This document shows positions 14,626 to 63,215 of a DNA stretch of 64,000 bases, piece by piece (within the stretch, counting starts at the first letter, position 1; every line of letters begins with the position of its first letter). The position numbers were made by a program, and so were the translations under genes. The notes beneath the pieces are model-generated. The model was given only the letters and a program-made list of their open reading frames with translations, had not been told where the DNA came from and made no database searches. Location of the stretch: IMG/VR virus record IMGVR_UViG_3300044712_001255, positions 124,001 through 188,000 of that record; one strand, given 5' to 3'.

Positions 14626-14783
14626 CAGACGAAGAAATACAAGCAGACATCGATTATTTTACCAAGTGTTTGATTGATAACTTGAAGATTCCTAAGGAGT
14701 TTTTAGGCCACATCAAAGAGACACCCAATCCTCTTACAATTGAGGAAGACTTTGTGTTAGAGACCAAGGAGAAAAAAGAATGA
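14622..14783 (+). CDS. 53-aa ORF missing from the ORF track; resembles a portal-protein segment
   Basis: GTG 14622 to TGA 14783 with GTGA/ATGA overlaps on both sides; MTDEEIQADIDYFTKCLIDNLKIPKEFLGH... Confidence 0.55.
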   Translation: MTDEEIQADIDYFTKCLIDNLKIPKEFLGHIKETPNPLTIEEDFVLETKEKKE

Positions 14784-17896: not shown

Positions 17897-18898
17897 ATGG
17901 AGCACAACTACCAATCGTTTACGACAGCATACGCAGGACTGATTAAGGATGTTTACGAGAATCCTGATTTTGTATGTGCTCCACGCGGGCAGAAGATCAA
18001 GGAGAAGTTGGGTGTCAAGTTTGTCATCCAGAATCCACGAGCTCGATTGCCATTCATCAAGGAACGTAAGTTCTCTGTTGCGTATGTGATAGCTGAGGCG
18101 TTGTGGTATCTCAGCGGTAACAACAGCACTGAATGGATCTCTTACTATTCGAAGTTCTGGCGTGACATCAGCGACGATGGCGTAACTGCAAATTCAGCGT
18201 ATGGCGCTAGAATTTTCAAGCCACATTCTCGATCTGGCGCGTTGTCCCATGATGATGGGTGGACGCAGTGGAACTGGCTGATTGATGAGCTAGCGGCAGA
18301 CAACGACTCTCGTAGGGCCGTCGTGCACATCAGGAGCCCTCTCGATTCTCGATTGGCCAAGAAGGATGTACCCTGCACGCTGACCCTTCAATTTTTTCTG
18401 AGGGATGACAAGGTGCATCAGGTCGTCTCTATGAGGTCTTCTGACCTCGTCTTGGGCATCGCTAACGACATTCCGGCGTTTACGATTTTCCAAGAGCTCT
18501 TGGCGTTGGACCTCACTGAACGTTTGAAGCGTCCCATCGGATTGGGAACATATACACACGTCAGTAACTCTTTGCACATTTACGAGAGGAACTTTACGTT
18601 GGTGGAGTCTATCATCAATACGACTGAAGATCTGACGAAATACGATGATGAGTCATACGCCATGCCCGCCATGCCAAGCAAGCCTCCGTTGGTAGATCTC
18701 AATTGTCATGAATCAATGATTCGAGTTGCGACAGCAGGTGTACGATTGACGCACGCCAACTATCGTACTTCAGATCCATACTGGCGAGATTGGCAGACGA
18801 TCTTAGCACGTCATCGTTGTCAGAAGTGGGATATTGACTGTAATTTTGACGTTCTTGGTGGGATCAATTGGCCACACTACGGATTCTTTGAGGAGTGA
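17897..18898 (+). CDS. Thymidylate-synthase-family enzyme with dCMP hydroxymethylase (T4 gp42-like) signature
   Basis: NSAYG, DVPCTLTLQF, MRSSDLVLGIANDIPAF (Asp at the ThyA Asn177-equivalent position), SLHIYERNF. Confidence 0.75.
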   Translation: MEHNYQSFTTAYAGLIKDVYENPDFVCAPRGQKIKEKLGVKFVIQNPRARLPFIKERKFSVAYVIAEALWYLSGNNSTEWISYYSKFWRDISDDGVTANSAYGARIFKPHSRSGALSHDDGWTQWNWLIDELAADNDSRRAVVHIRSPLDSRLAKKDVPCTLTLQFFLRDDKVHQVVSMRSSDLVLGIANDIPAFTIFQELLALDLTERLKRPIGLGTYTHVSNSLHIYERNFTLVESIINTTEDLTKYDDESYAMPAMPSKPPLVDLNCHESMIRVATAGVRLTHANYRTSDPYWRDWQTILARHRCQKWDIDCNFDVLGGINWPHYGFFEE

Positions 18899-18899: not shown

Positions 18900-19502
18900 A
18901 TGACATGTGTAGTTGGCTACAAAGATGGCGATGCCATCTATCTTGGGTCTGACAGCTACGTGGGTAGCGTCGAAAATGGCATTCAACATGTCCTGGCAAA
19001 TCCAGAGAAGATCTTTCAAACGGGACAGTTCTTGATTGGTGTCGCGGGTAGCATGCGCATCGGTCAACTTCTTCACCACGGTCTACGCGTCGCAAAGCAG
19101 AGACGTGGTGATTCAGATCAAAAGTACTTAGTGATCAATGTGATGAGTGCCATCAGGTCTTTGTTACAGGAACACTGTCAGTGGGGCTCCGCAGAAGATG
19201 ATTCCGAAGTGGGCATGATGTATGACACTGATTTGATCCTAGCCTACAAGAATCAAATCTACATGATCGACGTAGACCTGCAAGTACAGCAGATCGTAGG
19301 AAACTATGTCTGCATCGGCTCCGGCCGCGAGGTGGCCAATGGTGCTATGTTCGCTTTTGAAAATGGCGATGTTGCAGAAGTAGCTGTATCAGCTCCCGAC
19401 CGCATAAAACTTGCGCTTCAGGCGGCAACGCACCATCAATCTGGTATTTTGCCGCCTTACCATATCATGCAGCTCAAGAACGGTATAGTTTCTAAGGTAT
19501 GA
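18900..19502 (+). CDS. Ntn-hydrolase, HslV/proteasome-beta-like protease 3
   Basis: MTCVVG, SDS, EKIF, CIGSG. Confidence 0.7.
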   Translation: MTCVVGYKDGDAIYLGSDSYVGSVENGIQHVLANPEKIFQTGQFLIGVAGSMRIGQLLHHGLRVAKQRRGDSDQKYLVINVMSAIRSLLQEHCQWGSAEDDSEVGMMYDTDLILAYKNQIYMIDVDLQVQQIVGNYVCIGSGREVANGAMFAFENGDVAEVAVSAPDRIKLALQAATHHQSGILPPYHIMQLKNGIVSKV

Positions 19503-20080
19503 AGTTGCCGATGCAAAATCCTCAATTTATTGTCTATTGTGGTCCAATGTGGTCGGCAAAGACAACGTCTATGTTGCTTCGCCTTGAACGTTTTGAGTTA
19601 CAAGGACGAAAAGTTAAGCTGTTCAAACCAAATATCGATGAACGATATGATGCAAAGTTTGAAGTTGTAACTCACTCTGGGTGGAAACGTGCCGCAGTGC
19701 CTATCAAGAATGCGGTTGATATCCTCAAAGAGATTGAGAATGATCCACCCGAAGTGATTGCGCTCGACGAAGCGTTCATGGTGAAGGATAGCCATAAGGT
19801 ATTGGTGTGGTTATTCAAGACAGGAGTGACTATTGTAGTCTCGAGCCTTGATTTGAGTTTTAAGGGAGTACCTTTCAAAGAAGTTGAAAAGATGCTGTCA
19901 TGGGCGACGGAGGTGCATAAGTGCGCTGCCGTTTGCAAGGCATGTGGTTCTGACGCATTCTACACATATCGTAAGAATGATGACAACGAAGATATCATAG
20001 TGGGTGGTGCTGAGCTCTATGAGAGTAGGTGTTTCAGGTGTCATCCCATCATTGACGAGAGACCTGGTGACTATGAGTGA
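19499..20080 (+). CDS. tdk: Thymidine kinase
   Basis: GPMWSAKTT, LDEAF, CxxC...Y..RCxxC. Confidence 0.88.
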   Translation: MKLPMQNPQFIVYCGPMWSAKTTSMLLRLERFELQGRKVKLFKPNIDERYDAKFEVVTHSGWKRAAVPIKNAVDILKEIENDPPEVIALDEAFMVKDSHKVLVWLFKTGVTIVVSSLDLSFKGVPFKEVEKMLSWATEVHKCAAVCKACGSDAFYTYRKNDDNEDIIVGGAELYESRCFRCHPIIDERPGDYE

Positions 20081-20576
20081 GATACAACGTCCTACTTGGC
20101 CACAAAAGTGGATGAACATCGCCAGAGAAATTTCTGAGATGTCTTATGATTCGCGCTTGAAAGTTGGCGCAATTATCGTCCCAGTTGACAATACTGGCAT
20201 ACTTTCATTGGGATTCAACGGCAATGCTCACGGCCTTCCCAACAAACGTGACAGCGAAGAAGAGGGCAAGGCGGGTTTCATTCACGCAGAGCAAAATTGT
20301 TTCTATAAACTTGATTATCGACACCCATCACAGAAGGTTCTATACGTTCTCTATTCGCCTTGTCCTGAATGCGCAAAAGGCGCAATACAGTGTAAGATAA
20401 ACAGAGTTGTTTATGATAAACCTTTTCGAGATACGCGTGGTATAGACATTCTGAATATGGGCGGAATCGAAGTGTACACGCTCGATGAAGCGATATTCCT
20501 GGCGCAACAAGGCATCTGGGGAGATGAACATTGTAAGGTAGATCGCAAGGTCGCGCTGACAAGTTTACGTCCATAG
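20073..20576 (+). CDS. dCMP deaminase
   Basis: KVGAII, GFNG, HAEQN, SPCPECAK. Confidence 0.9.
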   Translation: MSEIQRPTWPQKWMNIAREISEMSYDSRLKVGAIIVPVDNTGILSLGFNGNAHGLPNKRDSEEEGKAGFIHAEQNCFYKLDYRHPSQKVLYVLYSPCPECAKGAIQCKINRVVYDKPFRDTRGIDILNMGGIEVYTLDEAIFLAQQGIWGDEHCKVDRKVALTSLRP

Positions 20577-35924: not shown

Positions 35925-36257
35925 ATGTCAGAGAAACCAACGTTGAATGATCATATCGACAACGTACGACGTCAATTGGAGAATAGCGTCGCGCTTGTTA
36001 GCATGTATTTGTTTATAGCATTGCTTACGTCGCTCGCTGCACTTGGGATGTATTGTTTGTACAATGTCGCTACGCATGATCACAAGCATGACTATTGCTT
36101 TTTGGAAGTGAGTGATTACAATAGCAATATCATAGTTCTATATGCTCACAGGCCATGGCAAGCGTCTTCACGTATTGGAACGTTCGTGAATGTGGATGAG
36201 GCTCTTGTGGCTGCCAAGAAGATCAACTGCCAAATCAGCACAGCGGAGGTAAAGTGA
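35925..36257 (+). CDS. Single-TM hypothetical protein
   Basis: TATGAT 6 nt before ATG; one hydrophobic segment. Confidence 0.55.
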   Translation: MSEKPTLNDHIDNVRRQLENSVALVSMYLFIALLTSLAALGMYCLYNVATHDHKHDYCFLEVSDYNSNIIVLYAHRPWQASSRIGTFVNVDEALVAAKKINCQISTAEVK

Positions 36258-37114
36258 TAATCTGTTCTGAAAAGAATGGAAGTAGAAAGTATTGGCGTTG
36301 GCTTGTGAAATGTGAAAATTGCGCAAAGGAACGTTGGGTTGCTCAGGGAGCGCGCCCAGAAACAAAAACGCAGCATTGGTGTAAATCTTGCGCGTTTAAG
36401 AAATCGACACAAACACCTCAAGCAATTGAAAAACGTAAACAAACATGTCTTAAGAAATTTGGGTTTGTAAACGCATTTCAATCACCAAAAACAAAACGTA
36501 CCGTGAAAGAGCGATTTGGTGTTGATAACGTGTTTCAACATGAGTCTGTAAAAGAGAAAATTAAACAGACGACATTTGCGCATTATGGCGTAACTTGCTC
36601 TTTACAATCACCTGTTGTTTATGAAAAGAAACGACAAACTATGATTGAACGTTACGGCGTTGAGTTTGCGTTACAGTCAGACGCGATTAAGAAGAAGATA
36701 GATTTTAAGGCGGCATGGCAAAAACGTCATGAAACGCTAAAAAGACTTGGCAGTTATGGATCACGTACATCGAAAATTGAAGGATTATTTTACGTTGAGC
36801 TTATGACGCTGTTTGGTGCAGCTAACGTAGAACGTTTTGTATTAGTAAATGATTGGTCTATTGATTTCTACGTCAAGTCAATAGACGCGTATATCCAATT
36901 TGATGGAGTGTACTGGCATGGTCATAACAAAACGCTTGATGAGCTAAGACAATCAACGTCAAAAAGATCTCATACAATTGCGTGTCATCGTGAAAATGAT
37001 GAAAGACAAAATCTTTGGTTTAGAGACAATAATTTACGCTTAATTCGAGTCACAGACGAAGAGTTCAAGAATGGTAAACATTTGGAGAAATTGAATGTCA
37101 ATAATGATCATTGA
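36254..37114 (+). mobile_element. Putative free-standing homing endonuclease, paralogue of 13600-14625
   Basis: CENC...CKSC, (F/Y)G repeats, KRHETLKR, WSIDFYVKSIDAYIQFDGVYWHG; AT-rich. Confidence 0.65.
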
Positions 37115-37919
37115 TGGAGCTAACTTTTTACATCGTGCTCGTGCCGGATTTGCACATGGCGAACATGCCCTGGTGTTTACGTTCTTTCGCAATCTGCGTG
37201 CCCTGGTCGGTCAGATGCAGCCTGAACGCGTCATCTTTTGTCGCGAAGGTCATCCAAAGCATCGCTACGCCGCACTTCCAGAATACAAGGCTAATCGCAT
37301 AGTTGAAGCAGATTCTCCAAAGGCTCGAGAGATGGAGGATTTTCATCGTCAATGCAAGATTGTCATTGACTTGATGAGTGAGTGCTTCCCAATCTCCGTG
37401 ATGAAGCACCCCGACTTTGAGTGTGATGACTTGATCTACAACATCATTGCTAATGGCGCATCAAGCACTGAATACGTCGTGGTGTCAAATGATTCAGACT
37501 TCACGCAGCTGCCTCAGCAGTTTGGTAATGCCAAGGTGTACAATCCAATGAAGAAGCAGTACGTCGTTCCACCCACGTATGATTACGTGACATGGAAGGC
37601 GCTTCGTGGAGATGGGTCTGATAACATTCCTGGCATTCCCGGGTGTGGTGATAAGACTGCGACGATGCTTGCCGAGAACGAAGACAAGCTCAAGGCTTAC
37701 TTCACCGAAGATCCAGAACGAGCTCGCATCTTTTCTCGCAATCACGATCTCATTTCCTTCCATCGCTTCAATGACGAGGAATTGATGCAAGTAACCTGTT
37801 CAGCACCATCTCGAGACTGGGACGTTGTCAAGACGGCATTTGAAGGTTGGAACTTCCAATCGTTGCTCGTCGAAAAAACGTGGGCCAAATTCATTGGCAC
37901 TTTTGATGCGTTGTGGTGA
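37095..37919 (+). CDS. 5'-3' exonuclease / flap endonuclease (PolI N-terminal, T4 RNase H-like)
   Basis: IIDGAN, EYKANR, ECDD, SNDSDF, GDGSDNIPGIPG.G.KTA. Confidence 0.92.
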   Translation: MSIMIIDGANFLHRARAGFAHGEHALVFTFFRNLRALVGQMQPERVIFCREGHPKHRYAALPEYKANRIVEADSPKAREMEDFHRQCKIVIDLMSECFPISVMKHPDFECDDLIYNIIANGASSTEYVVVSNDSDFTQLPQQFGNAKVYNPMKKQYVVPPTYDYVTWKALRGDGSDNIPGIPGCGDKTATMLAENEDKLKAYFTEDPERARIFSRNHDLISFHRFNDEELMQVTCSAPSRDWDVVKTAFEGWNFQSLLVEKTWAKFIGTFDALW

Positions 37920-38201: not shown

Positions 38202-39227
38202 ATGAAGCACATTTCATGGTGTGATATCGAGAATTTTCATACGCTACGTAAGACGCTCGACAAGTACCCTGAGCTGCTGCGCGGCCGCAAGAAGGTTACG
38301 TATCGTGGTAAGGTGAAGCTGCATGGTACCAACGCTGCAATTCAGTACGTGGGTGGTAAGGTGATTGCGCAGTCTCGTACTCAGATCATCAGCCCTGGAA
38401 ATGACAACTGTGGATTTGCGGCGTGGGTTGAAACATTTCGTGAAGAGCTTGAAAAGAAGTTGAACTCAAGCAGCTGTTCTTCGTTTGTGATTTATGGTGA
38501 ATGGTGTGGTCCTGGCATCATGAAGGGCGTCGCCGTCAATCAAATCCCTGAAAAGCAATTCGCAGTATTTGGTGCTCGACTTGTAGATCATAAAGGCGCA
38601 CCGTTCAATGAAATGGGATTTTTGTATCTTCCCACGACATTGCAAATCGTTATTGATAAAACATGGAATGTTCCATGCAAGATTCTGCCGTGGTACGGTG
38701 ATGAAATAACGATCGACTTTTCATCGAGTTCTGAAGAGCTCAATGAACAGCTCGTCGCAGTAAATGAAGCTGTGGCAGCAGTTGAAGCGTGCGATCCGTG
38801 GGTTGAAGAGAATTTCGGCGTCAAGGGAATTGGCGAGGGAATCGTCTATTACCCGGTGTCTCTTGGCGATGATACCACAAATTACAAGATCGCTACTGAT
38901 TTGATGTTTAAAGCTAAGGGCGAGCAGCACAAGGTTGTCACAAAGTCTAAGGCAGCACAGGCTGATCCTGCCGTAGCAGAGTCAGCTGCCGAGTTTGCTC
39001 GCATGGTGTTGCCGCTACCACGCCTCGAGCAGGGCGCTCGAGCTGTGAATCGTGGCGAGTTCAAGTGCGACATGAAGTTGATTGGTCCGTTTTTGAAGTG
39101 GGTCAATGAAGACATTGCAAAGGAATGCGATGCTGAGCTCGAGGCCAGCGGTATCGATCGAAAGGTAGCAATGAAGGCATGTTCTGACTTTGCGAGAACG
39201 TGGTACATGACAGAATCACGAAAGTGA
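38202..39227 (+). CDS. RNA ligase (Rnl2-like)
   Basis: KLHGTN (I), YGEWCG (III), FAVF, GEGIV (IV), FKAK (V). Confidence 0.85.
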   Translation: MKHISWCDIENFHTLRKTLDKYPELLRGRKKVTYRGKVKLHGTNAAIQYVGGKVIAQSRTQIISPGNDNCGFAAWVETFREELEKKLNSSSCSSFVIYGEWCGPGIMKGVAVNQIPEKQFAVFGARLVDHKGAPFNEMGFLYLPTTLQIVIDKTWNVPCKILPWYGDEITIDFSSSSEELNEQLVAVNEAVAAVEACDPWVEENFGVKGIGEGIVYYPVSLGDDTTNYKIATDLMFKAKGEQHKVVTKSKAAQADPAVAESAAEFARMVLPLPRLEQGARAVNRGEFKCDMKLIGPFLKWVNEDIAKECDAELEASGIDRKVAMKACSDFARTWYMTESRK

Positions 39228-40021: not shown

Positions 40022-40834
40022 ATGGAAATTGCAGACAAGCTCACGCCTATCCCTGAGAAAGACTTCATACTGCTTGTTGCTCGATGTTGGGCAAAGTATT
40101 ACAATTTTCCGCCCAAAGTGGATCAGTTGGCGTGTTGTCTGTCGCAGATGGTACTTGAGTCTGGACGCGAAAATCGCAATGGCGTCATGATGTGGGGCAA
40201 GAGCGCCCACAATTACAACTGGGGAAACATCAAGTACTCTGGAGGAGAGCACTGGCAGTTCTACCCGGCAGGAGAATGGATCAAGGTTGATGGAAAACCG
40301 CAGTGGCAGATGTTTTACCCGCCGCACATACAGTGCAAGTTCCGCGCATTCCTCACGGCTGAGGACGGCACGATGGACTACATCGGGTTCCTAGAAAAGC
40401 GCGAGAATTATCGGGAGGCTTGGAATGATGGTGTCCTGGCTGGTGATCCTGTAAAATTCTCGTATGGCCTGAAGAAGGGCGGGTATTATACAGAACCTGT
40501 TGACAATTACACACGCACTGTCGTGAAACTGTTCAAGGAATTCCGTGGCAAAGTAGCTGACGTCTTGGGATCACCAGAAGCGTTAGACATATACGCGTCA
40601 GATTTCGAACGACGGGCTGCTATCATTGAAGCGCTCACTGCAAAACAGACTTGGGAAGAGTTACAGGCTTATGATGGTCCAACAAACGAAGATGTAATAG
40701 ATCGTCTGCCACCTCCACCTGCGCTGCCGAGTGAAGCAAACGCGGTGATTGAATACCGTAAGGGCTGGTCCATTGTGGACTTCATCATGTTCATCTTCAA
40801 GTTGATCATGGATGTCATGTCACGTCCTAAGTAA
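40022..40834 (+). CDS. Glucosaminidase/FlgJ-like peptidoglycan hydrolase (endolysin candidate)
   Basis: LESG, NYNWGNIK, FRAF, LKKGGYYT. Confidence 0.7.
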   Translation: MEIADKLTPIPEKDFILLVARCWAKYYNFPPKVDQLACCLSQMVLESGRENRNGVMMWGKSAHNYNWGNIKYSGGEHWQFYPAGEWIKVDGKPQWQMFYPPHIQCKFRAFLTAEDGTMDYIGFLEKRENYREAWNDGVLAGDPVKFSYGLKKGGYYTEPVDNYTRTVVKLFKEFRGKVADVLGSPEALDIYASDFERRAAIIEALTAKQTWEELQAYDGPTNEDVIDRLPPPPALPSEANAVIEYRKGWSIVDFIMFIFKLIMDVMSRPK

Positions 40835-41403
40835 TGGCTATGATTCATCGCGCAAATAAACTGTTCGAACAAGTCGTCAGACACATTCTTGCAGAAGAAA
40901 CACCAGCCTGGCCGGCTGTAACGCCCAAACCTGCTGGAGGAAGAGACCAAGTGTCACCCGCACGCACAAACTACGATAATCTCGTATCAAATACGCCGCT
41001 TTCACCCGGCGAAGGACATCTCAACCTTGATGAGCCCACTCGTCGGGCAGCATGTTGTTTGATCATTCGTAGCGATGGCAAGGTTCTTGCTGTATCGAGA
41101 AAGTACGACAAGAACGCAATGGGTTTACCTGGTGGAAAAGTGGACCCCGGCGAGACTCCCGAACTCGCTGCCGCTCGAGAACTCGAGGAAGAGACCGGCC
41201 TCACTGCAACTCGGCTGAATCCCGTATTCTCTCGCGTCGATGACGACGGTTATGAGACGACCACGTTCGAATGTGATGTTGATGATGTAGACGATATTCA
41301 CACTGACGAAGCAGGTCGAGTTGCATGGGTCACTTGGGAGAAGCTCCTCGATGGACCATTTGGCGATTACAACCTTGCTTTGAAGAACACAGTGGGTGCA
41401 TAA
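40834..41403 (+). CDS. NUDIX hydrolase
   Basis: PGGKVDPGETPELAAARELEEETGL. Confidence 0.9.
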   Translation: MAMIHRANKLFEQVVRHILAEETPAWPAVTPKPAGGRDQVSPARTNYDNLVSNTPLSPGEGHLNLDEPTRRAACCLIIRSDGKVLAVSRKYDKNAMGLPGGKVDPGETPELAAARELEEETGLTATRLNPVFSRVDDDGYETTTFECDVDDVDDIHTDEAGRVAWVTWEKLLDGPFGDYNLALKNTVGA

Positions 41404-41444
41404 TTGTACTGTAAAAATCAACACTTTGTGCGTATGATGTGTCA

Positions 41445-41993
41445 ATGGCTGACAAAAAGTACATTTGTGTGATTGATACTGAGACGACTGGCCTTGATCC
41501 CAAGGTACATGAGATCATAGACCTTTGCTTCGTGCGTCTATCATTTGAACCCGGTCCGCGGTGGAAGGAGACCATTGAGGAAGAGGGTCGTGTTGCTTGC
41601 AAAACGTTTCCAACAAATCCTAATGTTGATCCAACTGTTGCCGCAATCAACGGGTATGACGCCGCTCTGTGGGCTAAGGAGGCTGTGACTCTCCCAACTG
41701 CTCTTTACAACGCGCTTCCTCTAATGAAGGACGCATATCACATCGGTAGCAAGCCTTCATTTGATATTTCATTCATTGAAGCTGCGCTCGAGCGCCTTCA
41801 CTGGCAGCTTCCTCGCCTCGCAGGACACCACGCAATTGACATGGTATCGTCATTTGCATCTCTGTGGTTTGAGGGAAAGATCAAGAAGATTGGTCAGTCA
41901 TACGTGATGTCAACGCTCATTCCAGATGAGAAACAGCGTCATACTGCAGAAGAAGACGTCAACAACCTGATTGAAATGTTGAAGTTCCTGTGA
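41445..41993 (+). CDS. DEDDh 3'-5' exonuclease (DnaQ-like)
   Basis: IDTETTGL, FD..F, HTAEEDV. Confidence 0.88.
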   Translation: MADKKYICVIDTETTGLDPKVHEIIDLCFVRLSFEPGPRWKETIEEEGRVACKTFPTNPNVDPTVAAINGYDAALWAKEAVTLPTALYNALPLMKDAYHIGSKPSFDISFIEAALERLHWQLPRLAGHHAIDMVSSFASLWFEGKIKKIGQSYVMSTLIPDEKQRHTAEEDVNNLIEMLKFL

Positions 41994-42430
41994 TGAAACG
42001 TGGGTGGATTCCATCAAGAAGCCCGTATAGTCTTATACAAGAAGACGTTTGGTCACCAACGAACGGTGGATGGTTGGTGCTTGTGTCTTGCGTGCTGTTG
42101 AATTGCACGACTCGCAAGCAAGTCCAGAAAGTGATGCCACGATTTCATCACGATTGGAATTCACCCGCAAAGTTTCTCCTTGCTGATGTTGATGATGTGC
42201 AGAATACGATCAAGTGTCTTGGATTTGGGTCTCGGCGGACACTTAGACTTCGAGACCTTGCACAAGACATGCTCGCTGGTTTCACTGATCCTCGAGAACT
42301 GCGCGGTATTGGAGAATACTCTGCACGTTCGTATGAGATATTTTGCTTAGGAAAGTTGGGAGATGAAGAACCCAGTGACGGCTCACTTGGGCGATATTGG
42401 CGATGGGCGAAGAGAAATCTTTCCAGGTGA
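41990..42430 (+). CDS. MBD4-like HhH DNA glycosylase
   Basis: WIPSRSPYSLIQE, LLN.T, LG, ELRGIGEY..RSYEIFC, PSD..L..Y. Confidence 0.8.
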   Translation: MMKRGWIPSRSPYSLIQEDVWSPTNGGWLVLVSCVLLNCTTRKQVQKVMPRFHHDWNSPAKFLLADVDDVQNTIKCLGFGSRRTLRLRDLAQDMLAGFTDPRELRGIGEYSARSYEIFCLGKLGDEEPSDGSLGRYWRWAKRNLSR

Positions 42431-43962: not shown

Positions 43963-45471
43963 ATGCCATCAAGGAAAAAACGTTTGCTCTACAGAAGCAC
44001 GTCAATTTTCGGCAGAGCACCACGACCAACAAAAGAAATGAACCCACCCATGAAAATGAAGCGCAAGAAGTTTGATCCTGACATCAACCAAATGGATTCG
44101 CTTGTCAATGGCGCGACCGTGTCCAACATTCGTTGGCTTGCCAACAAGTACTATGCGTCTGGAATCCCGGAAGCCCTTGAGACTTGTGGCGCAGTGCTCG
44201 ATAAGATTGCGCCCTTTGCTGAAAAGCCTGGCATTTTCACCGCAGGTCGATCGATGTTGGGTCTCCTTGAGCTCTTTGGTGATAACAACGCCGTGTGGTC
44301 TGATTGTTACTTTGACGACAAGTCAGAGTGGGTTGAGCCATTCAGCTCTGCGTTGTTGCGTATGATTGTCAATGTTGCGTCCGAGTTTCCTTATGAGGTC
44401 ATTCGCCCAAAGGATAATTCCAAGACGTCGGCAATCAAGGTCGTTGACTTTGATGGTGTAAAGGTTGGGTGGAATGTCGTTGCGTCGTCTCCTGATTTGA
44501 TGCCATTCTCCATCTACGTTGAGGTGGGCGGAGTCGATCATGTCAAGGCAATCTTGAAGGACAAGATGTGGCACCAATACGGCGACAAGTCATTGGTGTT
44601 GAACCAGACGCACAATGTTATGAATGACTCCACAAAGGTGGAGATCAAGGTTGACGACCTTGTTGATGCACTTCCGAGCGGGCCCGCCGCTCGCCACGCT
44701 CGAAACTTTGAGAAGGCGTTTGCAGTCAATGAGCATCGATCATTGTTCCTGTATGGGCCTCCCGGGTCTGGTAAGAGCACCATGGCTCGACAAATTGCCA
44801 AGGAGCTCAACCTGCGAAGCATCAGGTTCAAGGTACAGTGCATCAATGACAACGTCGGCACGCTGCAGGACATTGTTGAAATCTTTCAACCAGGGTGCAT
44901 CATCATTGATGACTTTGATCGTGCAGCAGACCCAGCAGTGCAGCTCGACCTGATCTCTCACATCAGGAAGACTGTGCCGCTTATCATTGCCACTGCGAAC
45001 GATCGCAATGCGCTCGATGAGGCGCTGCTGCGGCCTGAGCGCTTTGATGAGCTTGAGTTCGTCAAGCAACTCGATGAGGGCGTGATTCGCAACATGCTTG
45101 GGCAGTATGCCGATGAAGCATATGACCAGGTAAAGGATTGGCCGATTGTCTTCATCAATGACTATGTGCGTCGGCGCAAGTGGTTGTCTGCCGAGGAGGC
45201 CGTTGAGGCTATGCGCGAGCTCTCTCGGCGTGTTGCTCGACTGTCGTCTTATGATGATGACGATGCGTTCAATAGTGCTGAATCCATCAGGCGCCTCTTG
45301 AAGACTTCTGGCGGCAAGCGTCGGTTGAAGATGTCGACCGCTGCTTCGAATCGAGTGCCAGCGCCACCCGGGCTCAGTGACCCTGCGTTGCAAGCTCTGC
45401 TTGAGCAGATTAACGACGGCGATAGCGAAGATGAATCTTACGCCGAGGAAGAATGCAACTTTGTGAAATAA
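43963..45471 (+). CDS. AAA+ ATPase
   Basis: Walker A GPPGSGKST, Walker B IIIDDFD, SRH LDEALLRPERFD. Confidence 0.88.
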   Translation: MPSRKKRLLYRSTSIFGRAPRPTKEMNPPMKMKRKKFDPDINQMDSLVNGATVSNIRWLANKYYASGIPEALETCGAVLDKIAPFAEKPGIFTAGRSMLGLLELFGDNNAVWSDCYFDDKSEWVEPFSSALLRMIVNVASEFPYEVIRPKDNSKTSAIKVVDFDGVKVGWNVVASSPDLMPFSIYVEVGGVDHVKAILKDKMWHQYGDKSLVLNQTHNVMNDSTKVEIKVDDLVDALPSGPAARHARNFEKAFAVNEHRSLFLYGPPGSGKSTMARQIAKELNLRSIRFKVQCINDNVGTLQDIVEIFQPGCIIIDDFDRAADPAVQLDLISHIRKTVPLIIATANDRNALDEALLRPERFDELEFVKQLDEGVIRNMLGQYADEAYDQVKDWPIVFINDYVRRRKWLSAEEAVEAMRELSRRVARLSSYDDDDAFNSAESIRRLLKTSGGKRRLKMSTAASNRVPAPPGLSDPALQALLEQINDGDSEDESYAEEECNFVK

Positions 45472-55784: not shown

Positions 55785-58700
55785 GCCCCTGACGACCTCG
55801 CCGCCCTGCGCGCCAAGCTGTCGGCGGCGGAGAGCAGGGTTTACGGGCTGCAGATGTCCCTCAAGCTACTCGGGGAAGCAGCACATCAGGAGGCAGTGGA
55901 GGTCGAGTCCATCATCCACGCCCTCTGCGACGAGCGGGCGAGGCTCAGGGCTAGCGTGAGGTGGGGGCATGAATCTGTTGCCGCTATCCGGGCGTCCACC
56001 CCGCACCGCATAGTCCTTCCTATCGGCTACGTGCCTGGCCTCTCTGGGATGCGCGCTGGCATGCTGCTGGAATATCAGGAAACTGGTGAACGAGTGCGAG
56101 TGTGTTCCGCGCCTGAATACTGGAAGCCACACTGGGCGAGTTGGCACCTAGCCGAACCTTACATCATGTTGGTGGAAGAGGCCGCCGAGCCCCCCAAGCC
56201 CTCCCCCCGCATCCTCCCCGCTGGCCACGTGCCGGGGCGGTTGATGGTGGGGATGGTGGTACACAGTGTGTGGGATTGGGAGGTAACCAACGTGACTTCG
56301 ACAGAGGCTAGGATCTACTGTCCACAAACTGGGAGTTCTAGGTGGGTGAGCGTTGGCAACGACCTTCGCGCTTGCCTCGCCGCCCCCTTCGAGGTGCCCA
56401 ATGAGTGACCCGGCAAGGTGGGGCGCGCTAAATGAGAGTGAGCGCGAGGTGTTGAGGGCTGCGCATGTGCTACGCGTCGCCGGTTTGACGCCCGCCCCGT
56501 CAGTGGCCGCTGAACCTGCCTATCGCCGCCATATGCTGGAGTTGTTGGAGAGAGTTGGCAAATGCTGCGCCTTCCTCACCGATACCGACCCGCCCGAGGC
56601 GGTGATCGCGATGCCGGAGGGGTGGGAGGTGGTCGATGCCATCATCCCCGCGGGTGCGGTATTCCTGCTCCACCAGGGCTCCAACGTGATGGGGTTCTGG
56701 CGAGGTCACGTCCACATGGGTGACAATTATCTGGATGATGATTTCCGAGTTCCGGAGTCGGCGGTTCGCGCCCTGATGCTTCGTGCCGCCGGCTTGCGGG
56801 TGGAGGGGCCGCATGACTAACCGTTGGGGCGCAGGTGAGTGGTTGTTGGGTTTTGCGTGTGCCTTGTTCATAGGAGCCGTCATGCTGATGTTGCTTTACT
56901 CGTGCGCTCGTGAGCGGCGTTGTTATGACTCCAAGTGCCCCGCCGGCATGGTGCCGGTGTGGGCTAGCAGCGCGGGATGCATTTGCGTAGTGAGGCCCGC
57001 TGACCATGCCTAACCGCCACCTACTCCTGCCCGCGCCGCCGGATGAGAGGACGTGCGATGGATGTGACTTCCCGAGTAGTGACCACCGCTGGTGTACTCT
57101 ACACGGTGGCAAACTTAACGACGATGGTAGGTCGCTACTGCGCAACGCAAGATGCCTTACCGCCGAACAGTCCGCCCGCGAGCAGGCTGCCGAGCTTGCC
57201 AAGCTACGGCGGATTGAGGACGCCACAAGGGCGTTCTACGCCATCTACGAGCAGAATCCTTACGCCCCCTCATCGCCCGAGGAGAGCGAGGCGTCTGGTA
57301 AGCTTTGCGCCGCATTGGAGGAGAAGTGATGGACCTATCAGATGATGGATTGTACGCTGTCGCAGAAGACAAAGATGAGGAAATACAACGACTCCACGCA
57401 ACGTCAACCATTATCCAAGCTTGGGCAATGGTACTTCGTGCAGTCCGCGACGCTTCGCGCGCTGAGAGTTCCGCAGAGTTGTTTGGGCTGAGGGCACAGC
57501 TAGCTGAATGCACGCGCGAGAACGAGGCGCTCAGGAAGGCTTTGCGTGCGCACGTGTCGGATGTCGCCTCAGATGGCGTGATGGGATGGTCCGATTCTGC
57601 TAGGGACGAGTTAGGATAATTGGAGGAACGATGAAACTGGACGATGAGTCACTATGCAAACGCGCCATCAAGTGCGCGAACATCAACGCTGAAGACCTTA
57701 CAGGCATACTGCAAGACGTCCGCGACGCCGCCCGCGCCGAGAGCGCTGGGGAGGTGGAGAGGCTGCGGGCACGGGTGGCGGAGTTGGAGCAGAAGCTCGA
57801 CCTTGCGCACGACGACGCTGTTGCGGAGGCTCTGGCCGATGCGGCGCAGTTGCGCAGGAGCAACGAAACGCTGGAGGAAGAACTCCGCCGCAAGTCAGAG
57901 CGGCTGGCGGAGTTGGACGCACCGGTGGACTCGCGCGTGCGGAATGCGTGTGGGGAGTACGTGCCTGTGTCCAATGACGGGGTGTACTGGAAGTCACGGT
58001 ATGACTCATGTGAAGAGCGCCACCTGAGCCGGTTTCATGACTTGGAGGATGAGTACCACGACCTCCGCGTCCTCCTCGCCGCCCTCGAAGCGCCGCCGGT
58101 TGTGCCGGAGGGGTGGGAGATAGGGTGTACTATGGGTGCCTGGGTTTTCTGGGAGACCAACGTGGACGTGCCGGGCCAGAACCGTCGTGTTGCCCGCGCA
58201 CAGACTGCCCGCGCACTAGCCTGGGCCATCGAGCACGACGCCAGGCCACCACATGCCGCGGACGCGAAGGGAGGCGAGCTTCCGCCTGGCTACTGGGCCG
58301 GTGCGCAAGCTGCCCTCAATGCCGCGCCAGAGATCGAAGACTCCGAGCCGTCGGAAGAACCGGAGCCACTGCTATGACCATCCCGAAGCGCCTGATAGTC
58401 ATCGAAGCCACAATCCCGACGGGGGAGAGCTGCGAGGGGTGCGAGTTTTCGTGCGGTATAATGGAGTGCTCACCTACTGAGTTTCGTATCGAGCGCGACA
58501 AGGTTGGATGTAAGGACACCGCATTCGGGGAGGTGTTGCGGACCGACGGCCTCCGCCTCCCCGCCTGCCGCACCCGCGACGGCTACGTGGTGCTGAAGCC
58601 TGGGAGCGCTGGGGCGAGGCTGCTAGAGACTATCATGCGACACGGCAGCGACCTGCGGGACTTTGAACCCGCCGCTAGGTATGCCGTCGTCGAGGCAGCG

Positions 58701-58810
58701 GCTGCGTACTACCATGCGGAGCAACTTCAGAAGGCTCTTGATGCTGAAAGGCTCGCCACCTCCACTGAAGCCCGCAAGGTCGCGGGGGAGGGGGAGGCAG
58801 GTGGGTGATG
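55785..58810. other. GC-rich island carrying ORFs 55566-56408 (3' part), 56401, 56813, 57006, 57329, 57631, 58374
   Basis: Abrupt shift to GC-rich sequence and G/C-ending codons inside ORF 55566, with return near 58810. Confidence 0.7.
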
Positions 58811-60802
58811 GATATGAAAGTCATCAATGACGAAGTATCAGCTATACTACAAGAAGAGCGTCGACGTGACTCTACACGCCAACACTTCGCACCGAAGTTG
58901 CCGGACGGGTGGTCATACGACAAACAAGCAGAGTGCTTAGATGGACCCGCTATTCGCATTTACGTTGGGACCAGTGATGTGCAGGTGTTTGCTGGTCTTG
59001 ATGGAGGTGGTAGGATCCCCTGGCTCGTCCTACGCTGGCTTGCGTTTCATGGAGGTTGTGATGAGTGATAAATCATTAGTATGGCAAATAGTCTATGCCA
59101 CCACATTCTCGGCATTGGTGGAAGACTTACGAAAGGCGGATTTTCGTATATGGGGCGAACGTAGTCAACTACTTGAAGACAATCTTGATGCGGTTATCGA
59201 GGAAGCTACGCGCATCGCAGATGCTTCATTGAAAGGAGATACTCATGGATGAGTTCTGGCCGTTGGTCGCCCTTGTGACCATGCTTATGTGCGGATACGC
59301 AATTGGTATCGTTGAACGTTGGTTGTTGCGAGCTTCATATCGGGAGTTGGCAGATGATCTTCAATATTGGAAGACACGATATTGCGATATGTTTACGATC
59401 TCTGACGCAGAGATACACATGGCTAGAAGAGCGCAAGAAGAAGCAAAGACGCTACGAAGCGAAAGAAATTACTATGCAGAGCAACTTCAGAAAGCTCGAG
59501 GCTGTCGACATACGTGGAGTCGTCATGATCTCGATGGGAGACGATGATGAGTAATCCATTCATTATTGACGTAACAGAAACTGGCGATCGTAGACCGGGA
59601 CTCCCGTATCCAGTCACAGTTTTACTTACACCTGAATACATTGCTGATTTGCTGCGTTCTCGAGGCTACCTCGTGGCAGAACCGGGATCAGCCATGGCGG
59701 AATTAGTGTCGGCGGCCCGTCACATCGATGAGGGGTGGTATCCAGATCGGTGTTCAGAGCTGGGCGAGTTAGCACGCAAGGTCACCAAAGAACCCACCAA
59801 ATGACACGAGTATACATTGTGAGCTTGACAGTATATCCTGTTTCTTGACACAAAGAATTGTTTAGAGTGACATAGAGAACCAACAGAAGGAAAAAGAAAT
59901 GACAATTGACCAACACAATGAACTTCATATGATCCTGACGATCCTATGGTTGCTTTCGACTGCGGCGGCGATCTGGTGGTGGCGTCTGTCGATATTTGTG
60001 TTTCGTATCAATGATGAGCTGCTAGAACTCACGAGCAAGATGAATCAGCATACGCTTGATTCAGCGACAAAGATGCTTGAGATAGCAGCGCAGGCCAAGG
60101 CTAGGTACGAAGCCTCGCAGGAAGATGAGCGATGAGGCCAGTCAGTGCCAGCGTAATGGGATGGTTGCTTGGCTCCGATTATTGCATACGCAACATCGGA
60201 AGCAAGTTCATGATTGGTGTGATTCCGCTCCTTCCAGGCGTTGAGCGTTACGTATTGCGTGATAGGTTTCGTGATTCTTCTAGTGATCCTGATACGTGGT
60301 ATGCAACCATGTGGCGAAATGAGAGCGGTTCAATAATCATGTTGACGCTTTCTAACGAAGACGAAGATAATCTGACGACGCTGACGACCTATCGCGTTCC
60401 AGTTTTAGGATACGGCAGGTTGTTTGCCGAGGGTGGTTGCATTCCACCCGGGCTTGTTGGCTATGCATACGAGCTGCTGGACGCGTACCTGACAGTTGGG
60501 ACAACGCAAGATTGGATAAGAGTGAAGAGATGATGCAATCGCTTGACATAGCAATCAGATGGCTGGTGTTTATCGGGATCCTTCTTGTGAGCCCTGCGAT
60601 CATAATAGCGGTGCTTACACATGAGTCATCACACGCTGCAACGTCTTGCTGGGAACAGTGCGCAATTGACCGCAAGGTTTGTGAAATTGCGCTGAAGAAA
60701 CACAACTATCGACACTACAAGTTGGTGTGTGGCGTGGCACAATGCAACTGTGAGAAGTTGTGCAATGTTGAAGATGAAGCGATGGCATCGGTGGTAAAAT
60801 GA
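58805..60802 (+). other. Accessory ORFs 58805, 59061, 59245, 59544, 59899, 60132, 60530
   Basis: Coupled ORFs; 60530-60802 is TM + Cys-rich. Confidence 0.55.
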
Positions 60803-62264: not shown

Positions 62265-63215
62265 ATGAGTTTAGGACTTTGTTGCCACTACCTGTCAGAG
62301 GTTCCAAATAAACGTGGGACATATCAAAACATCCTCAAACAACGTGTGTTGCAATTGGGTCGGTGGCAGGCTGGCGCGTATAGCGAAAAGTACGTGCGAC
62401 AGTTATACATCGACAATGTCAATACGTTGATTACGCAGTTGCCTGACATCTTCGAGCGTTACAAGGTATTTCGCTTTCCAAGTGGTATCTTTCCGCTTTA
62501 CGATGTCGTGCCACGCGAGTGGTGGGACAATGGCGTTATTACCACGATGCTCAGCGTATTGGGTAACATTGTCAAAGCGCATGGTGTCCGCGCGACATTT
62601 CATCCTGGACAATTTTGCTCTTTGACTTCTGACGATTCGCGTATCATTGCAAATTCTGTGCGCGAAATTAACCACCACGCGTGGATCTTTGATGAAATGA
62701 AGTTGCCTGCCACGCCGTTTCACGCTATCAATGTGCATGGTGGAAAAAGTGATAGGCAGGAACGCCTTGCGTTCATGTTAGACACGCATTCTGTCGGTCT
62801 TGATGAACATGAGTTATCATCCTCAGCGCGTGCTCGCATTACACTCGAAAATGATGAGTCATGTTACTCGGTTATTGATCTTCTTGAGATACACAAATTG
62901 ACCGGCGTCCCAATTGTCTTTGACTCTCACCATCACACATTCAATGATGATGGAATTGACATGGATCTTGCTTCCAAAGCATGCAAGGCGACGTGGTTGC
63001 CAAGCGGTTGCAAGCCGCTTCAGCACATCAGTAACAGCGATCAATTGCTTTCTGAATCAGCGTCGTTTATCAAGCGTCGAGCCCACAGTGATTACATCTG
63101 GCACATTCCTGAATGCCAGAGAATTGACGTAGTTAATGATATGATTAGCCTCGACGTAGAATGCAAGATGAAGAATTTGGCTGTAGACGCCCTCCAGAGG
63201 CTGTTGACTGGATGA
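62265..63215 (+). CDS. uvsE: UV damage endonuclease (UvdE/UvsE)
   Basis: LGLCC, FRFPSGIFP, FHPGQF, INVHGG, LENDE, FDSHHH, QHIS, HSDY, VECKMKN. Confidence 0.9.
   Translation: MSLGLCCHYLSEVPNKRGTYQNILKQRVLQLGRWQAGAYSEKYVRQLYIDNVNTLITQLPDIFERYKVFRFPSGIFPLYDVVPREWWDNGVITTMLSVLGNIVKAHGVRATFHPGQFCSLTSDDSRIIANSVREINHHAWIFDEMKLPATPFHAINVHGGKSDRQERLAFMLDTHSVGLDEHELSSSARARITLENDESCYSVIDLLEIHKLTGVPIVFDSHHHTFNDDGIDMDLASKACKATWLPSGCKPLQHISNSDQLLSESASFIKRRAHSDYIWHIPECQRIDVVNDMISLDVECKMKNLAVDALQRLLTG

What the first reader, a model, noticed from the sequence alone, without database searches (positions are those of the whole stretch)
41990..42430. Stand-alone MBD4-like glycosylase in a phage
Seen: motifs parallel the eukaryotic MBD4 catalytic domain (W-x-P-x-RSP-x-x-L-x-QE, GIG-x-Y, YxIFC, and catalytic Asp in PSD versus PED). 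Known: MBD4 excises T, U and hmU opposite G after deamination of modified C. Inference: dedicated repair of deaminated modified cytosines, supporting the hmC hypothesis.
Basis: partly seen in the sequence, partly recalled or inferred. Interest (0 to 1): 0.6.

Follow-up and report, generated by a model that had tools for sequence, protein, structure and literature searches.

The report
Phage MBD4-type mismatch DNA glycosylase
A giant phage that probably replaces its cytosines with hydroxymethylcytosine carries a small stand-alone copy of the animal MBD4 repair enzyme, most likely to remove the T-like bases formed when modified cytosines deaminate; the same gene recurs in unrelated phages with modified cytosine and has not been described.

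Summary
Window 41993-42430 (+) encodes a 145-146 aa protein that matches the MBD4 glycosylase domain end to end. By sequence the E-value is 3e-16; the family profile gives 4e-41, against 2e-11 for MIG, 1e-8 for EndoIII and 4e-7 for MutY. The AF2 model (pLDDT 92.7) fits MBD4 at TM 0.87 and rmsd 1.8 A, against 0.57-0.65 for MIG, Nth and MutY.

The catalytic Asp, the pocket Gln and Tyr and the wedge residue are kept. There is no Fe-S loop and no lyase Lys. MBD4's Arg468 finger is Cys, with an invariant Arg three residues later.

The host is a 324-kb IMG/VR phage. Its only thymidylate-synthase homolog carries N177D and L143D with D169 kept, the published signature of a dCMP hydroxymethylase. A dCMP deaminase lies beside it.

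The glycosylase family occurs in over 90 viral contigs. Among cultured phages it occurs only in the 5mC phage Xp12 and its relatives and in cyanophage S-TIM54. Every complete or near-complete carrier has an N177D synthase homolog.

Best reading: a monofunctional G:T/G:U/G:5hmU glycosylase that repairs deaminated modified cytosine. Activity is untested. It is a new viral member of a known family, unreported in the papers searched.

The parts
41993..42430 (+). Stand-alone MBD4-type HhH-GPD DNA glycosylase gene (145 aa from ATG 41993; 146 aa if GTG 41990 is used). Key codons, in P0001 numbering: Q17 at 42038-42040, C39 (MBD4 R468 position), R42, F79 (MBD4 L508), Y110 at 42317-42319, catalytic D130 at 42377-42379.
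   Evidence: MBD4 is the best match by sequence (3e-16), by profile (4e-41) and by fold (TM 0.87). D130, Y110 and Q17 are invariant in 83 viral homologs.
41439..41993 (+). DEDDh (RNase T / DnaQ-like) 3'-5' exonuclease. Its stop overlaps the glycosylase start by one base.
   Evidence: Pfam RNase_T 2e-10 and a weak DnaQ match in PDB. It is adjacent to the glycosylase only here and in the closest relative, L004, so a functional link is inferred, not shown.
40834..41403 (+). NUDIX (MutT-like) nucleotide pyrophosphohydrolase, syntenic with the glycosylase in this phage lineage.
   Evidence: Pfam NUDIX 7e-21. Only generic MutT-like PDB matches. It lies upstream of the glycosylase in 17 related loci. 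In Xp12-type phages a nucleotide pyrophosphohydrolase also sits next to the glycosylase.
37095..37919 (+). 5'-3' flap endonuclease (FEN), a candidate for long-patch base excision repair. It is a conserved member of the FEN-orf143-NUDIX-glycosylase-AAA gene order.
   Evidence: Pfam 5_3_exonuc_N 1e-18. Synteny is seen in 33 loci.
38202..39227 (+). Nucleotidyl-transferase ligase (Pfam RNA_ligase family). A possible nick-sealing step; inferred only.
   Evidence: PF09414, 7e-15.
17897..18898 (+). Thymidylate-synthase homolog predicted to be a dCMP hydroxymethylase. In E. coli ThyA numbering it has L143D (KDVPC), D169 kept and N177D (SSDLVLGIAND). It is the only PF00303 gene in the 324-kb record.
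   Evidence: residue rules from PMC13326640 and PMC8670742. Best PDB matches are MilA CMP hydroxymethylase 2.7e-40, T4 dCMP hydroxymethylase 7e-16 and ThyA 2.6e-12.
20004..20576 (+). dCMP/cytidine deaminase family gene 1.1 kb downstream of the synthase homolog.
   Evidence: PF00383, 9e-16. The same pairing is found in 12 of 12 large glycosylase-bearing genomes checked.
19499..20080 (+). Thymidine kinase, part of the same nucleotide-metabolism cluster.
   Evidence: PF00265, 1e-39.
62265..63215 (+). UvdE-type UV-damage endonuclease. It is the only candidate found in the phage for cutting the abasic site left by the glycosylase; this role is inferred.
   Evidence: Pfam UvdE 5e-45. No ExoIII, EndoIV or Fpg/Nei family gene was found in the record. 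That UvdE enzymes also nick at abasic sites is from my own knowledge, not tested here.

Best explanation
The gene encodes an active, monofunctional DNA glycosylase of the MBD4 type, with no Fe-S cluster. Like MBD4, it should flip out and excise a pyrimidine mispaired with guanine: thymine, uracil or 5-hydroxymethyluracil. These are the products of deamination of 5-methylcytosine, cytosine and 5-hydroxymethylcytosine.

The phage appears to make 5-hydroxymethyl-dCMP with a thymidylate-synthase homolog. If so, each deamination in its DNA leaves a G:hmU (or G:T) pair that uracil-DNA glycosylase does not remove. The phage enzyme would start base excision repair at such sites. The abasic site would then be cut by the phage UvdE or by host AP endonucleases, and repair finished by the phage flap endonuclease, polymerase and ligase.

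What is shown: family membership, fold, conserved catalytic and pocket residues, and co-occurrence with cytosine-specific synthase homologs. What is inferred: substrate range, the modified base itself, and the downstream repair steps.
For: Sequence and fold:
- phmmer to the MBD4 glycosylase domain gives 3e-16 over the full length; MIG gives 3.7e-4 and nothing else is significant.
- A profile of 34 homologs gives MBD4 4.4e-41 (143 bits, ungapped), MIG 2.4e-11, EndoIII 1.2e-8 and MutY 4e-7.
- The AF2 model has pLDDT 92.7. The top 16 Foldseek hits are all MBD4, at TM 0.84-0.87 and rmsd about 1.8 A over about 141 residues. They include complexes with G:T and G:5hmU. MIG, EndoIII and MutY score 0.57-0.65.

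Residues (human MBD4 numbers derived from the alignment anchored on D560 and R468, which I recall from the MBD4 literature):
- Q17 = Q449, Y110 = Y540, D130 = D560, F79 = L508.
- In 83 viral homologs D130, Y110, G106, G108, N38, T40, R83, P128 and L133 are invariant, and Q17/E18 are present in 77 of the 77 with an N-terminus.
- Tyr, not Lys, occupies the HhH position of the EndoIII lyase lysine. The protein ends 16 residues after the Asp with no Cys cluster.

Context:
- The window's synthase homolog has N177D and L143D with D169 kept. This is the signature described for T4-like 5hmdCMP synthases and MilA.
- A dCMP deaminase lies beside it.

Co-occurrence:
- All 9 glycosylase-bearing viral genomes that are at least 90% complete have an N177D homolog.
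- In Xp12 (5mC replaces C; its synthase homolog was shown to make 5mdCMP, bioRxiv 10.1101/2024.12.05.627091), AXL1 and Donnerlittchen, the glycosylase is the first gene of the operon glycosylase - nucleotide hydrolase - synthase homolog - dCMP deaminase - DHFR.
- Cyanophage S-TIM54 also has both genes.
- On the P0169 contig the gene overlaps the start of an Fpg/Nei glycosylase-lyase gene, which fits a base excision repair role.
Against: - No biochemical data exist for any viral member.
- MBD4's DNA-inserting Arg468 is Cys here. Across the family that position is C 70, L 6, Q 5, R 2, and K562 is Ser/Ala/Val. Recognition of the lesion and of the opposite G may therefore differ from MBD4.
- The gene is not obligatory for such phages. 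A 91%-complete relative (G082) has the N177D homolog but no glycosylase, and T4-type hmC phages lack it.
- Within the window's own lineage all synthase homologs are of the cytosine type whether or not the glycosylase is present. The association therefore rests on about four independent lineages, without an unbiased background sample.
- If the hmC is further glycosylated (an epimerase gene lies 2 kb upstream of the synthase homolog), the deaminated base might not fit an MBD4-like pocket.
- The modified base itself is only predicted from sequence.
Confidence: 0.68

Rival explanations
1. It is a general HhH-GPD repair glycosylase with another specificity (oxidised pyrimidines, alkylated purines, or adenine opposite 8-oxoG). 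Its presence in phages with modified cytosine would then be incidental.
For: - Pfam and NCBIfam see only the superfamily: HhH-GPD 2e-7, and nth 3.5e-5, far under its cut-off.
- The Arg finger and K562 of MBD4 are not kept.
- Jumbo phages carry many repair genes; UvdE is one in this window.
Against: - The match to MBD4 is about 30 orders of magnitude better than to any other HhH-GPD branch and covers the MBD4-specific N-terminal RSPxxLxQE segment that forms the pyrimidine pocket.
- There is no Fe-S loop and no lyase Lys.
- The gene sits inside the 5mC nucleotide operon of Xp12-type phages.
Confidence: 0.1
2. The chemistry is the same, but the lesions are enzyme-made rather than spontaneous. The glycosylase would protect phage DNA from cytosine deaminases. 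These could be host deaminase toxins or defences, or the phage's own dCMP-deaminase-family enzyme acting on single-stranded replication intermediates.
For: - A phage-derived deaminase of this family (mSCD-B5), linked to a 5mdCMP-making synthase homolog, deaminates 5mC and 5hmC in single-stranded DNA in vitro (bioRxiv 10.1101/2024.12.05.627091).
- 12 of 12 large glycosylase-bearing genomes checked have a dCMP-deaminase gene, mostly beside the N177D homolog.
- In Xp12-type phages both genes are in one operon.
Against: - dCMP deaminases are common wherever phages encode thymidylate-synthase homologs, so the co-occurrence is not specific.
- No evidence exists that the window's deaminase acts on DNA.
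- Some relatives have the deaminase and synthase homolog without the glycosylase.
Confidence: 0.15
3. It is used against other DNA rather than for self-repair. For example, it could excise bases from host or competitor DNA, or act only as a DNA-binding factor without catalysis.
For: - Phages with modified cytosine often encode enzymes that attack unmodified DNA (my own knowledge of T4 biology).
- The gene is small and dispensable in some relatives.
Against: - The catalytic Asp and pocket residues are invariant in 83 sequences, so a non-catalytic role is unlikely.
- MBD4-type pockets accept only mispaired uracil derivatives, which are rare in host DNA.
- The conserved neighbours are replication and repair genes: FEN, NUDIX, ligase, and Fpg/Nei in one relative.
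Confidence: 0.04

Closest known systems
Glycosylase domain of animal MBD4 (human residues about 426-580; PDB 4DK9, 4E9G, 4EVV, 4EW0, 6VJW)
   Same: - Same fold: TM 0.87, rmsd 1.8 A over 141 residues, about 30% identity.
- Same size.
- Same catalytic Asp, pocket Gln and Tyr, and wedge position.
- No Fe-S cluster and no lyase Lys.
- The N-terminal PxRSPxxLxQE segment is shared.
- A sister viral clade reaches 43% identity to a fish MBD4.
   Different: - No methyl-CpG-binding domain or linker; the whole protein is the catalytic domain.
- Arg468 is Cys, with an invariant Arg three residues later.
- K562 is Ser (Ala or Val elsewhere in the family).
- It is encoded by phages in which probably every cytosine, not only CpG, is modified.
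Plant MBD4L (Arabidopsis AT3G07930)
   Same: It is an MBD4-type catalytic domain without the MBD. It excises U and 5-substituted uracils, and less well T, opposite G, and is proposed to counter 5mC deamination (review PMC6728418).
   Different: The plant protein is a nuclear protein with a CpG preference. I recall it carrying a long N-terminal extension, which was not checked here. It was not compared by sequence, because no plant sequence was returned by the searches.
Mig.MthI / MIG thymine-DNA glycosylase (PDB 1KEA)
   Same: It is an HhH-GPD G:T mismatch glycosylase that accompanies a 5mC system. It has the same GxGxY motif in the HhH and is the second-best family by sequence and fold.
   Different: It is 221 aa with a 4Fe-4S cluster loop. 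The fold match is only TM 0.63 and the profile E-value 2e-11, against 4e-41 for MBD4.
AXL1 gp65 / Xp12 QNN97216 / Donnerlittchen 'endonuclease III' (annotated ENDO3c domain or hypothetical)
   Same: These are true homologs at 33-37% identity. The Xp12 protein is also MBD4-type: MBD4 5e-14 against EndoIII 5e-4. Their carriers are known or suspected 5mC phages.
   Different: - 160 aa, with a different N-terminus.
- Leu at the R468 position.
- The gene is embedded in the nucleotide operon rather than among replication genes.
- The AXL1 paper left the function open and made no MBD4 link (PMC9206674).
Vsr very-short-patch endonuclease of E. coli
   Same: It is a functional analogue, repairing G:T from 5mC deamination made by a companion methylation system (my own knowledge).
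   Different: It has an unrelated fold and chemistry: it is an endonuclease, not a glycosylase, and is specific for the Dcm sequence context.

Membership tests
MBD4-type glycosylase domain (HhH-GPD superfamily) | Full-length sequence similarity to the MBD4 catalytic domain that exceeds similarity to the other HhH-GPD branches | tested here: met
   Single sequence: 2.9e-16 against 3.7e-4 for MIG. Family profile: 4.4e-41 against 2.4e-11 (MIG), 1.2e-8 (EndoIII) and 4e-7 (MutY).
MBD4-type glycosylase domain (HhH-GPD superfamily) | MBD4 fold: a compact helical HhH-GPD domain of about 140 residues | tested here: met
   The AF2 model has pLDDT 92.7. Foldseek gives TM 0.84-0.87 and rmsd 1.6-1.9 A to 16 MBD4 chains; the next family is at 0.63.
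MBD4-type glycosylase domain (HhH-GPD superfamily) | Catalytic Asp (human D560) after the HhH and Gly/Pro-rich loop | tested here: met
   D130 aligns with D560 and is invariant in 83 viral homologs.
MBD4-type glycosylase domain (HhH-GPD superfamily) | Pyrimidine pocket residues Gln449 (in the RSPxxLxQE segment) and Tyr540 (GIGxY) | tested here: met
   Q17 and Y110 align with them. Q is present in 77 of the 77 sequences with an N-terminus, and Y in 83 of 83.
MBD4-type glycosylase domain (HhH-GPD superfamily) | Arg468 finger that fills the gap left by the flipped base | tested here: not met
   The position is Cys39; across the family it is C 70, L 6, Q 5, R 2. An invariant Arg (R42) lies three residues later, at the start of the next helix. 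Whether it substitutes could not be tested.
MBD4-type glycosylase domain (HhH-GPD superfamily) | No 4Fe-4S cluster loop (unlike MIG, Nth, MutY) and no lyase Lys in the HhH (monofunctional) | tested here: met
   The protein ends 16 residues after D130, with no Cys after C119. Tyr occupies the position of the EndoIII lyase Lys.
MBD4-type glycosylase domain (HhH-GPD superfamily) | Excision of T, U and 5hmU opposite G | not testable with these tools
   This needs an enzyme assay.
MBD4 protein proper (animal architecture) | N-terminal methyl-CpG-binding domain joined to the glycosylase domain | tested here: not met
   The 146-aa ORF is the catalytic domain alone. Pfam finds only HhH-GPD. Homologs are 137-187 aa.
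Endonuclease III / MutY / MIG branch | C-terminal Cys-rich Fe-S cluster loop, and best similarity to these families | tested here: not met
   There is no Cys cluster. NCBIfam nth scores 23.6 bits against a cut-off of 211.7. TM is 0.57-0.65.
dCMP hydroxymethylase (thymidylate-synthase homolog; context gene at 17897-18898) | N177D (cytosine substrate), L143D/E (water access, hydroxymethyl product), D169 kept (not a 5-hydroxy-dCMP synthase), catalytic Cys | tested here: met
   The motifs are KDVPCT and SSDLVLGIAND. The rules come from PMC13326640. Best PDB hits are MilA 2.7e-40 and T4 gp42 7e-16. The product itself is not testable here. Xp12's proven 5mdCMP synthase has Asn at position 143, so the rule is not absolute.

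The most novel reading that the evidence does not exclude
Phages that replace cytosine with 5mC or 5hmC may have evolved, or spread, the MBD4-type glycosylase as part of a three-gene kit: a cytosine-C5 synthase homolog, a dCMP-family deaminase and a mismatch glycosylase. In that kit the glycosylase would offset deamination, including damage done by the phage's own 5mC/5hmC-preferring deaminase.

The catalytic domain of eukaryotic MBD4 may also have been acquired from this viral pool, as has been proposed for other parts of the eukaryotic DNA-methylation toolkit. In the tree, animal MBD4 is a single clade (100/99) placed among the viral sequences, and a viral clade is 43% identical to fish MBD4. 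However, viral monophyly is not rejected (AU p = 0.37), and the root rests on a very long outgroup branch.
Probability: 0.2. Interest if true: 0.8.

Novelty: new member of a known kind. Interest (0 to 1): 0.6.

Why it matters
Phages that swap all their cytosine for 5mC or 5hmC face a particular mutational problem. These bases deaminate to T or hmU, which uracil-DNA glycosylase does not remove. How such phages cope has not been addressed in the papers I could search.

A widespread viral MBD4-type enzyme gives a concrete, testable answer. It could also serve as a genomic marker for predicting cytosine replacement in uncultured phages.

The proteins are small (about 140 aa), cluster-free G:T/G:hmU glycosylases. 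That could make them useful reagents for methylation and deamination sequencing chemistries.

The family is also the closest non-eukaryotic relative of MBD4 found here. This opens the question of where the eukaryotic enzyme for repairing 5mC deamination came from.

Tried and rejected
- PHROGs gave no family. Megablast of 10 kb around the gene against the phage collection gave nothing.
- NCBIfam gave only sub-threshold nth and 3-methyladenine glycosylase hits.
- A pattern scan of 185,579 prokaryote species genomes found one relative, on a Bdellovibrionota MAG contig with the same phage gene order. It is probably a phage contig. The patterns were specific to this subfamily, so more distant cellular relatives could have been missed.
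- A lineage-controlled 2x2 test gave no contrast. I took 17 further large contigs related through the flap endonuclease. Synthase homologs were found in 5 of 9 glycosylase-positive and 5 of 8 glycosylase-negative contigs, and all were of the cytosine type. So within this lineage the glycosylase is an accessory gene, and the association argument rests on comparison across lineages.
- A single-protein search with the phage DnaE returned only 5 loci and was dropped as a control.
- The AU test does not reject a tree in which all viral sequences form one group (p = 0.37). So the claim that animal MBD4 is nested inside phage diversity is not established.
- The neighbouring NUDIX protein matched only generic MutT-like structures, so no dCTPase assignment was made. 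The exonuclease matched DnaQ only weakly.
- Promoter, terminator and tRNA scans near the gene showed nothing above background.
Primate MBD4 entries listed were not used.
Full report
**1. The observation**

Window 41990-42430 (+) is an open frame of 146 codons from GTG. The second codon is ATG at 41993, and the database copy of this protein (P0002, 145 aa) starts there. The ATG shares one base with the TGA stop of the upstream ORF (TGATG), which is a common arrangement for coupled translation.

- WIPSRSPYSLIQE with WTPPRSPFNLVQE
- GIGEY with GIGKY
- YEIFC with YRIFC
- EPSD with HPED

The similarity is not chance. phmmer against all PDB chains gives E 2.9e-16 over residues 5-143, and the next family (MIG, 1kea) scores 3.7e-4. 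Pfam reports HhH-GPD above its cut-off.

**2. Which branch of the superfamily**

- Profile search. A profile of 34 homologs (A1) scores MBD4 at 4.4e-41 (143 bits, aligned without gaps over 139 positions). MIG scores 2.4e-11, EndoIII 1.2e-8 and MutY 4e-7.
- Predicted fold. An AlphaFold2 model built on that alignment has mean pLDDT 92.7. The 16 best Foldseek matches in PDB are all MBD4 glycosylase domains, at TM 0.84-0.87 and rmsd about 1.8 A over about 141 residues. They include complexes with G:T and G:5hmU. MIG, EndoIII and MutY follow at TM 0.57-0.65.

Residue mapping uses human numbers counted along the alignment from D560 and R468, both recalled from the MBD4 literature:
- Q17 = Q449
- Y110 = Y540
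- D130 = D560
- F79 = L508
- C39 = R468
- S132 = K562

In 83 viral sequences D130, Y110, both HhH glycines, N38, T40, R83, P128 and L133 never vary. Q17 and E18 are present in all 77 sequences that have an N-terminus.

The position of EndoIII's lyase lysine is Tyr. The protein ends 16 residues after the Asp with no Cys cluster. It should therefore be monofunctional and free of an Fe-S cluster, like MBD4 and unlike MIG, Nth and MutY.

One defining MBD4 feature is not met. The Arg468 finger is Cys (family: C 70, L 6, Q 5, R 2), while an Arg three residues later is all but invariant. There is also no methyl-CpG-binding domain. The protein is thus a member of the MBD4-type catalytic-domain family, not an MBD4 orthologue in architecture.

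**3. The genome and its cytosine chemistry**

The window is bases 124001-188000 of a 324,468-bp IMG/VR virus record judged 86% complete. Almost all genes are on one strand.

Genes around the glycosylase:
- a flap endonuclease (37095-37919)
- a ligase-family gene (38202-39227)
- a glucosaminidase
- a NUDIX hydrolase (40834-41403)
- a DnaQ-like exonuclease (41439-41993)
- an AAA ATPase (43963-45471)

The record holds a single thymidylate-synthase-family gene, at window 17897-18898. Its best solved relatives are the CMP hydroxymethylase MilA (2.7e-40) and T4 dCMP hydroxymethylase (7e-16), ahead of true thymidylate synthases (2.6e-12).

Aligned with T4 gp42, the Xp12 enzyme and canonical ThyA sequences, it reads KDVPCT and SSDLVLGIAND. 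In E. coli ThyA numbering that is L143D, D169 kept and N177D. Published work assigns meanings to these positions (PMC13326640; PMC8670742):
- N177D gives dCMP specificity.
- An acidic residue at 143 goes with hydroxymethylation, as in T4-like enzymes and MilA.
- D169N goes with 5-hydroxy-dCMP synthesis.

The rule at position 143 is not absolute, because Xp12's proven 5m-dCMP synthase has Asn there.

A thymidine kinase and a dCMP-deaminase-family gene lie just downstream (19499-20080 and 20004-20576).

**4. The family elsewhere**

The word search found 79 homologs of 111-187 aa, most between 137 and 187 aa. Several are on contigs of 120-250 kb. JGI's pipeline names some of them 'methyl-CpG-binding domain protein 4'.

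IMG/VR holds at least 82 loci by pattern scan, and 9 more appeared among contigs reached by another route.

Loci L004-L036 share the gene order FEN - orf143 - NUDIX - glycosylase - AAA with the window. The rest belong to other phage lineages.

Among 50,697 deposited phage records the family occurs only in these:
- Xp12 and its relatives (Xanthomonas phages, Stenotrophomonas phage AXL1, Janthinobacterium phage Donnerlittchen)
- cyanophage S-TIM54
- one faecal scaffold

Xp12 is the classic phage in which 5mC replaces all cytosine, and its synthase homolog has been shown to make 5mdCMP (bioRxiv 10.1101/2024.12.05.627091). In Xp12, AXL1 and Donnerlittchen the glycosylase is the first gene of a tight operon: glycosylase - nucleotide hydrolase - synthase homolog (N177D) - dCMP deaminase - DHFR. 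The Xp12 protein is itself MBD4-type (5e-14, against EndoIII 5e-4).

The AXL1 paper noted gp65 as an 'ENDO3c' protein of unclear function found only in Xp12, and made no link to MBD4 (PMC9206674). I found no paper that connects MBD4-type enzymes with phages.

**5. Co-occurrence with cytosine-specific synthase homologs**

- Of 79 glycosylase-bearing IMG/VR contigs searched, 35 have a PF00303 gene. Many of these contigs are small fragments.
- All eight genomes that are at least 90% complete have a homolog with Asp at position 177. So does a ninth found later (G081).
- One 250-270-kb lineage carries both a canonical ThyA (Asn) and an Asp-type homolog.
- S-TIM54 and Donnerlittchen also have Asp-type homologs.
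- All 12 large carriers checked have a dCMP deaminase, mostly beside the Asp-type gene.

As a rough baseline, any thymidylate-synthase-like gene is detectable in 1,941 of 50,697 phage records.

The weakness is independence. There are about four lineages: the window's jumbo-phage group, the 250-270-kb group, the Xp12 group and S-TIM54. I have no unbiased background sample of jumbo phages.

A control within the window's lineage was uninformative. All synthase homologs there are of the cytosine type, and some relatives lack the glycosylase, among them one that is 91% complete. The gene is thus an accessory safeguard, not a requirement. T4-type hmC phages also do without it.

**6. Mechanism proposed**

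- Shown: an intact, conserved MBD4-type active site in a phage that very probably makes a C5-modified dCMP.
- Inferred: the enzyme excises T, U or 5hmU opposite G, leaving an abasic site.

The record has no ExoIII, EndoIV or Fpg/Nei gene, but it does have a UvdE endonuclease at 62265-63215. From my own knowledge, enzymes of this kind also nick at abasic sites. Host AP endonucleases are the alternative. The flap endonuclease, the DnaE-type polymerase (3153-6584) and the ligase could complete the repair.

On a related contig (P0169) the glycosylase gene overlaps the start of an Fpg/Nei glycosylase-lyase gene, which would supply the missing lyase step. That contig also has DnaE, an N177D/L143D synthase homolog and an epimerase nearby.

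One variant of the hypothesis is worth testing. Phage deaminases of the dCMP-deaminase family can deaminate 5mC and 5hmC in single-stranded DNA in vitro. The glycosylase may therefore chiefly repair damage made by the phage's own enzyme.

**7. Relation to eukaryotic MBD4**

A second viral clade (around P0078 and P0119, from genomes of about 270 kb) is 43% identical to a fish MBD4 fragment.

I built a maximum-likelihood tree of 32 viral or metagenomic sequences, 14 animal MBD4 domains and E. coli Nth as outgroup. Animal MBD4 forms one clade (100/99) placed among the viral sequences, next to P0169 (84/93, not a starred branch).

The outgroup branch is very long (8.4). The AU test does not reject a tree with all viral sequences together (p = 0.37). 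The direction and timing of any transfer therefore remain open. No plant or protist sequences were available.

**8. Verdict**

The enzyme is a new, virus-borne, stand-alone member of the MBD4-type glycosylase family. It has one notable difference in the DNA-inserting residue. It is tied by context to phages with 5mC or predicted 5hmC genomes. Its activity, and the identity of the modified base in this phage, need experiments.

Noticed in passing
window 11456-12310 (+): A metallo-beta-lactamase-fold protein matches Pfam Anti-Pycsar Apyc1 at 2.6e-23 (83 bits, cut-off 50). It is a candidate cyclic-nucleotide-degrading counter-defence gene.
   Followed up: no
window 3153-6584 (+): A bacterial-type DnaE (Pol III alpha) polymerase with PHP, finger and HhH domains. 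The DnaQ-like exonuclease at 41439-41993 may be its separate proofreader. The same DnaE is found near the glycosylase on the P0169 contig.
   Followed up: partly
window 14780-15736 (+); also L240:20087-20408: An NAD-dependent sugar-nucleotide epimerase/dehydratase lies about 2 kb upstream of the synthase homolog. One lies again beside the synthase homolog on a related contig. This could mean the hmC is further glycosylated.
   Followed up: no
window 62265-63215 (+): A UvdE-type UV-damage endonuclease gene (5e-45). It is the only candidate found in the phage for incising strands at abasic sites.
   Followed up: partly
window 21113-21838 (+): A protein with an Fe/Mn superoxide dismutase C-terminal domain (1e-19), within the nucleotide-metabolism cluster.
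   Followed up: no
window 56001-60000: G+C rises to 0.58, against 0.43-0.51 in the rest of the window. The cause was not examined.
   Followed up: no
window 13600-14625 and 36254-37114 (+): Two paralogous proteins carry the uncharacterised domain DUF7487 (3e-21 and 7e-15).
   Followed up: no
L240:10401-11219 (ENA contig k141_101395): An Fpg/Nei-family glycosylase-lyase gene overlaps the end of the MBD4-type gene by 8 bases on a related 105-kb phage contig.
   Followed up: partly
G095:C1:29757-30176, G083:C1:63481-64101, G009:C1:46181-46795: In three related viral contigs the glycosylase or the synthase homolog is read through one in-frame TAG or TGA. This could be stop-codon recoding, a broken gene or a sequencing error.
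   Followed up: no
L110 (JBBAUR010000009.1, Bdellovibrionota MAG, 89 kb contig): The only hit in prokaryote species genomes has the same FEN - orf143 - NUDIX - glycosylase order as the phage. It is probably a phage contig binned into the MAG, or a hint at the host.
   Followed up: partly
L244 (cyanophage S-TIM54, OP053362.1:145421-146233): This cultured marine cyanophage has a synthase homolog with N177D but otherwise ThyA-like residues (CPPCH), together with an MBD4-type gene. That suggests 5mC-type cytosine replacement. I did not check whether this has been reported.
   Followed up: partly
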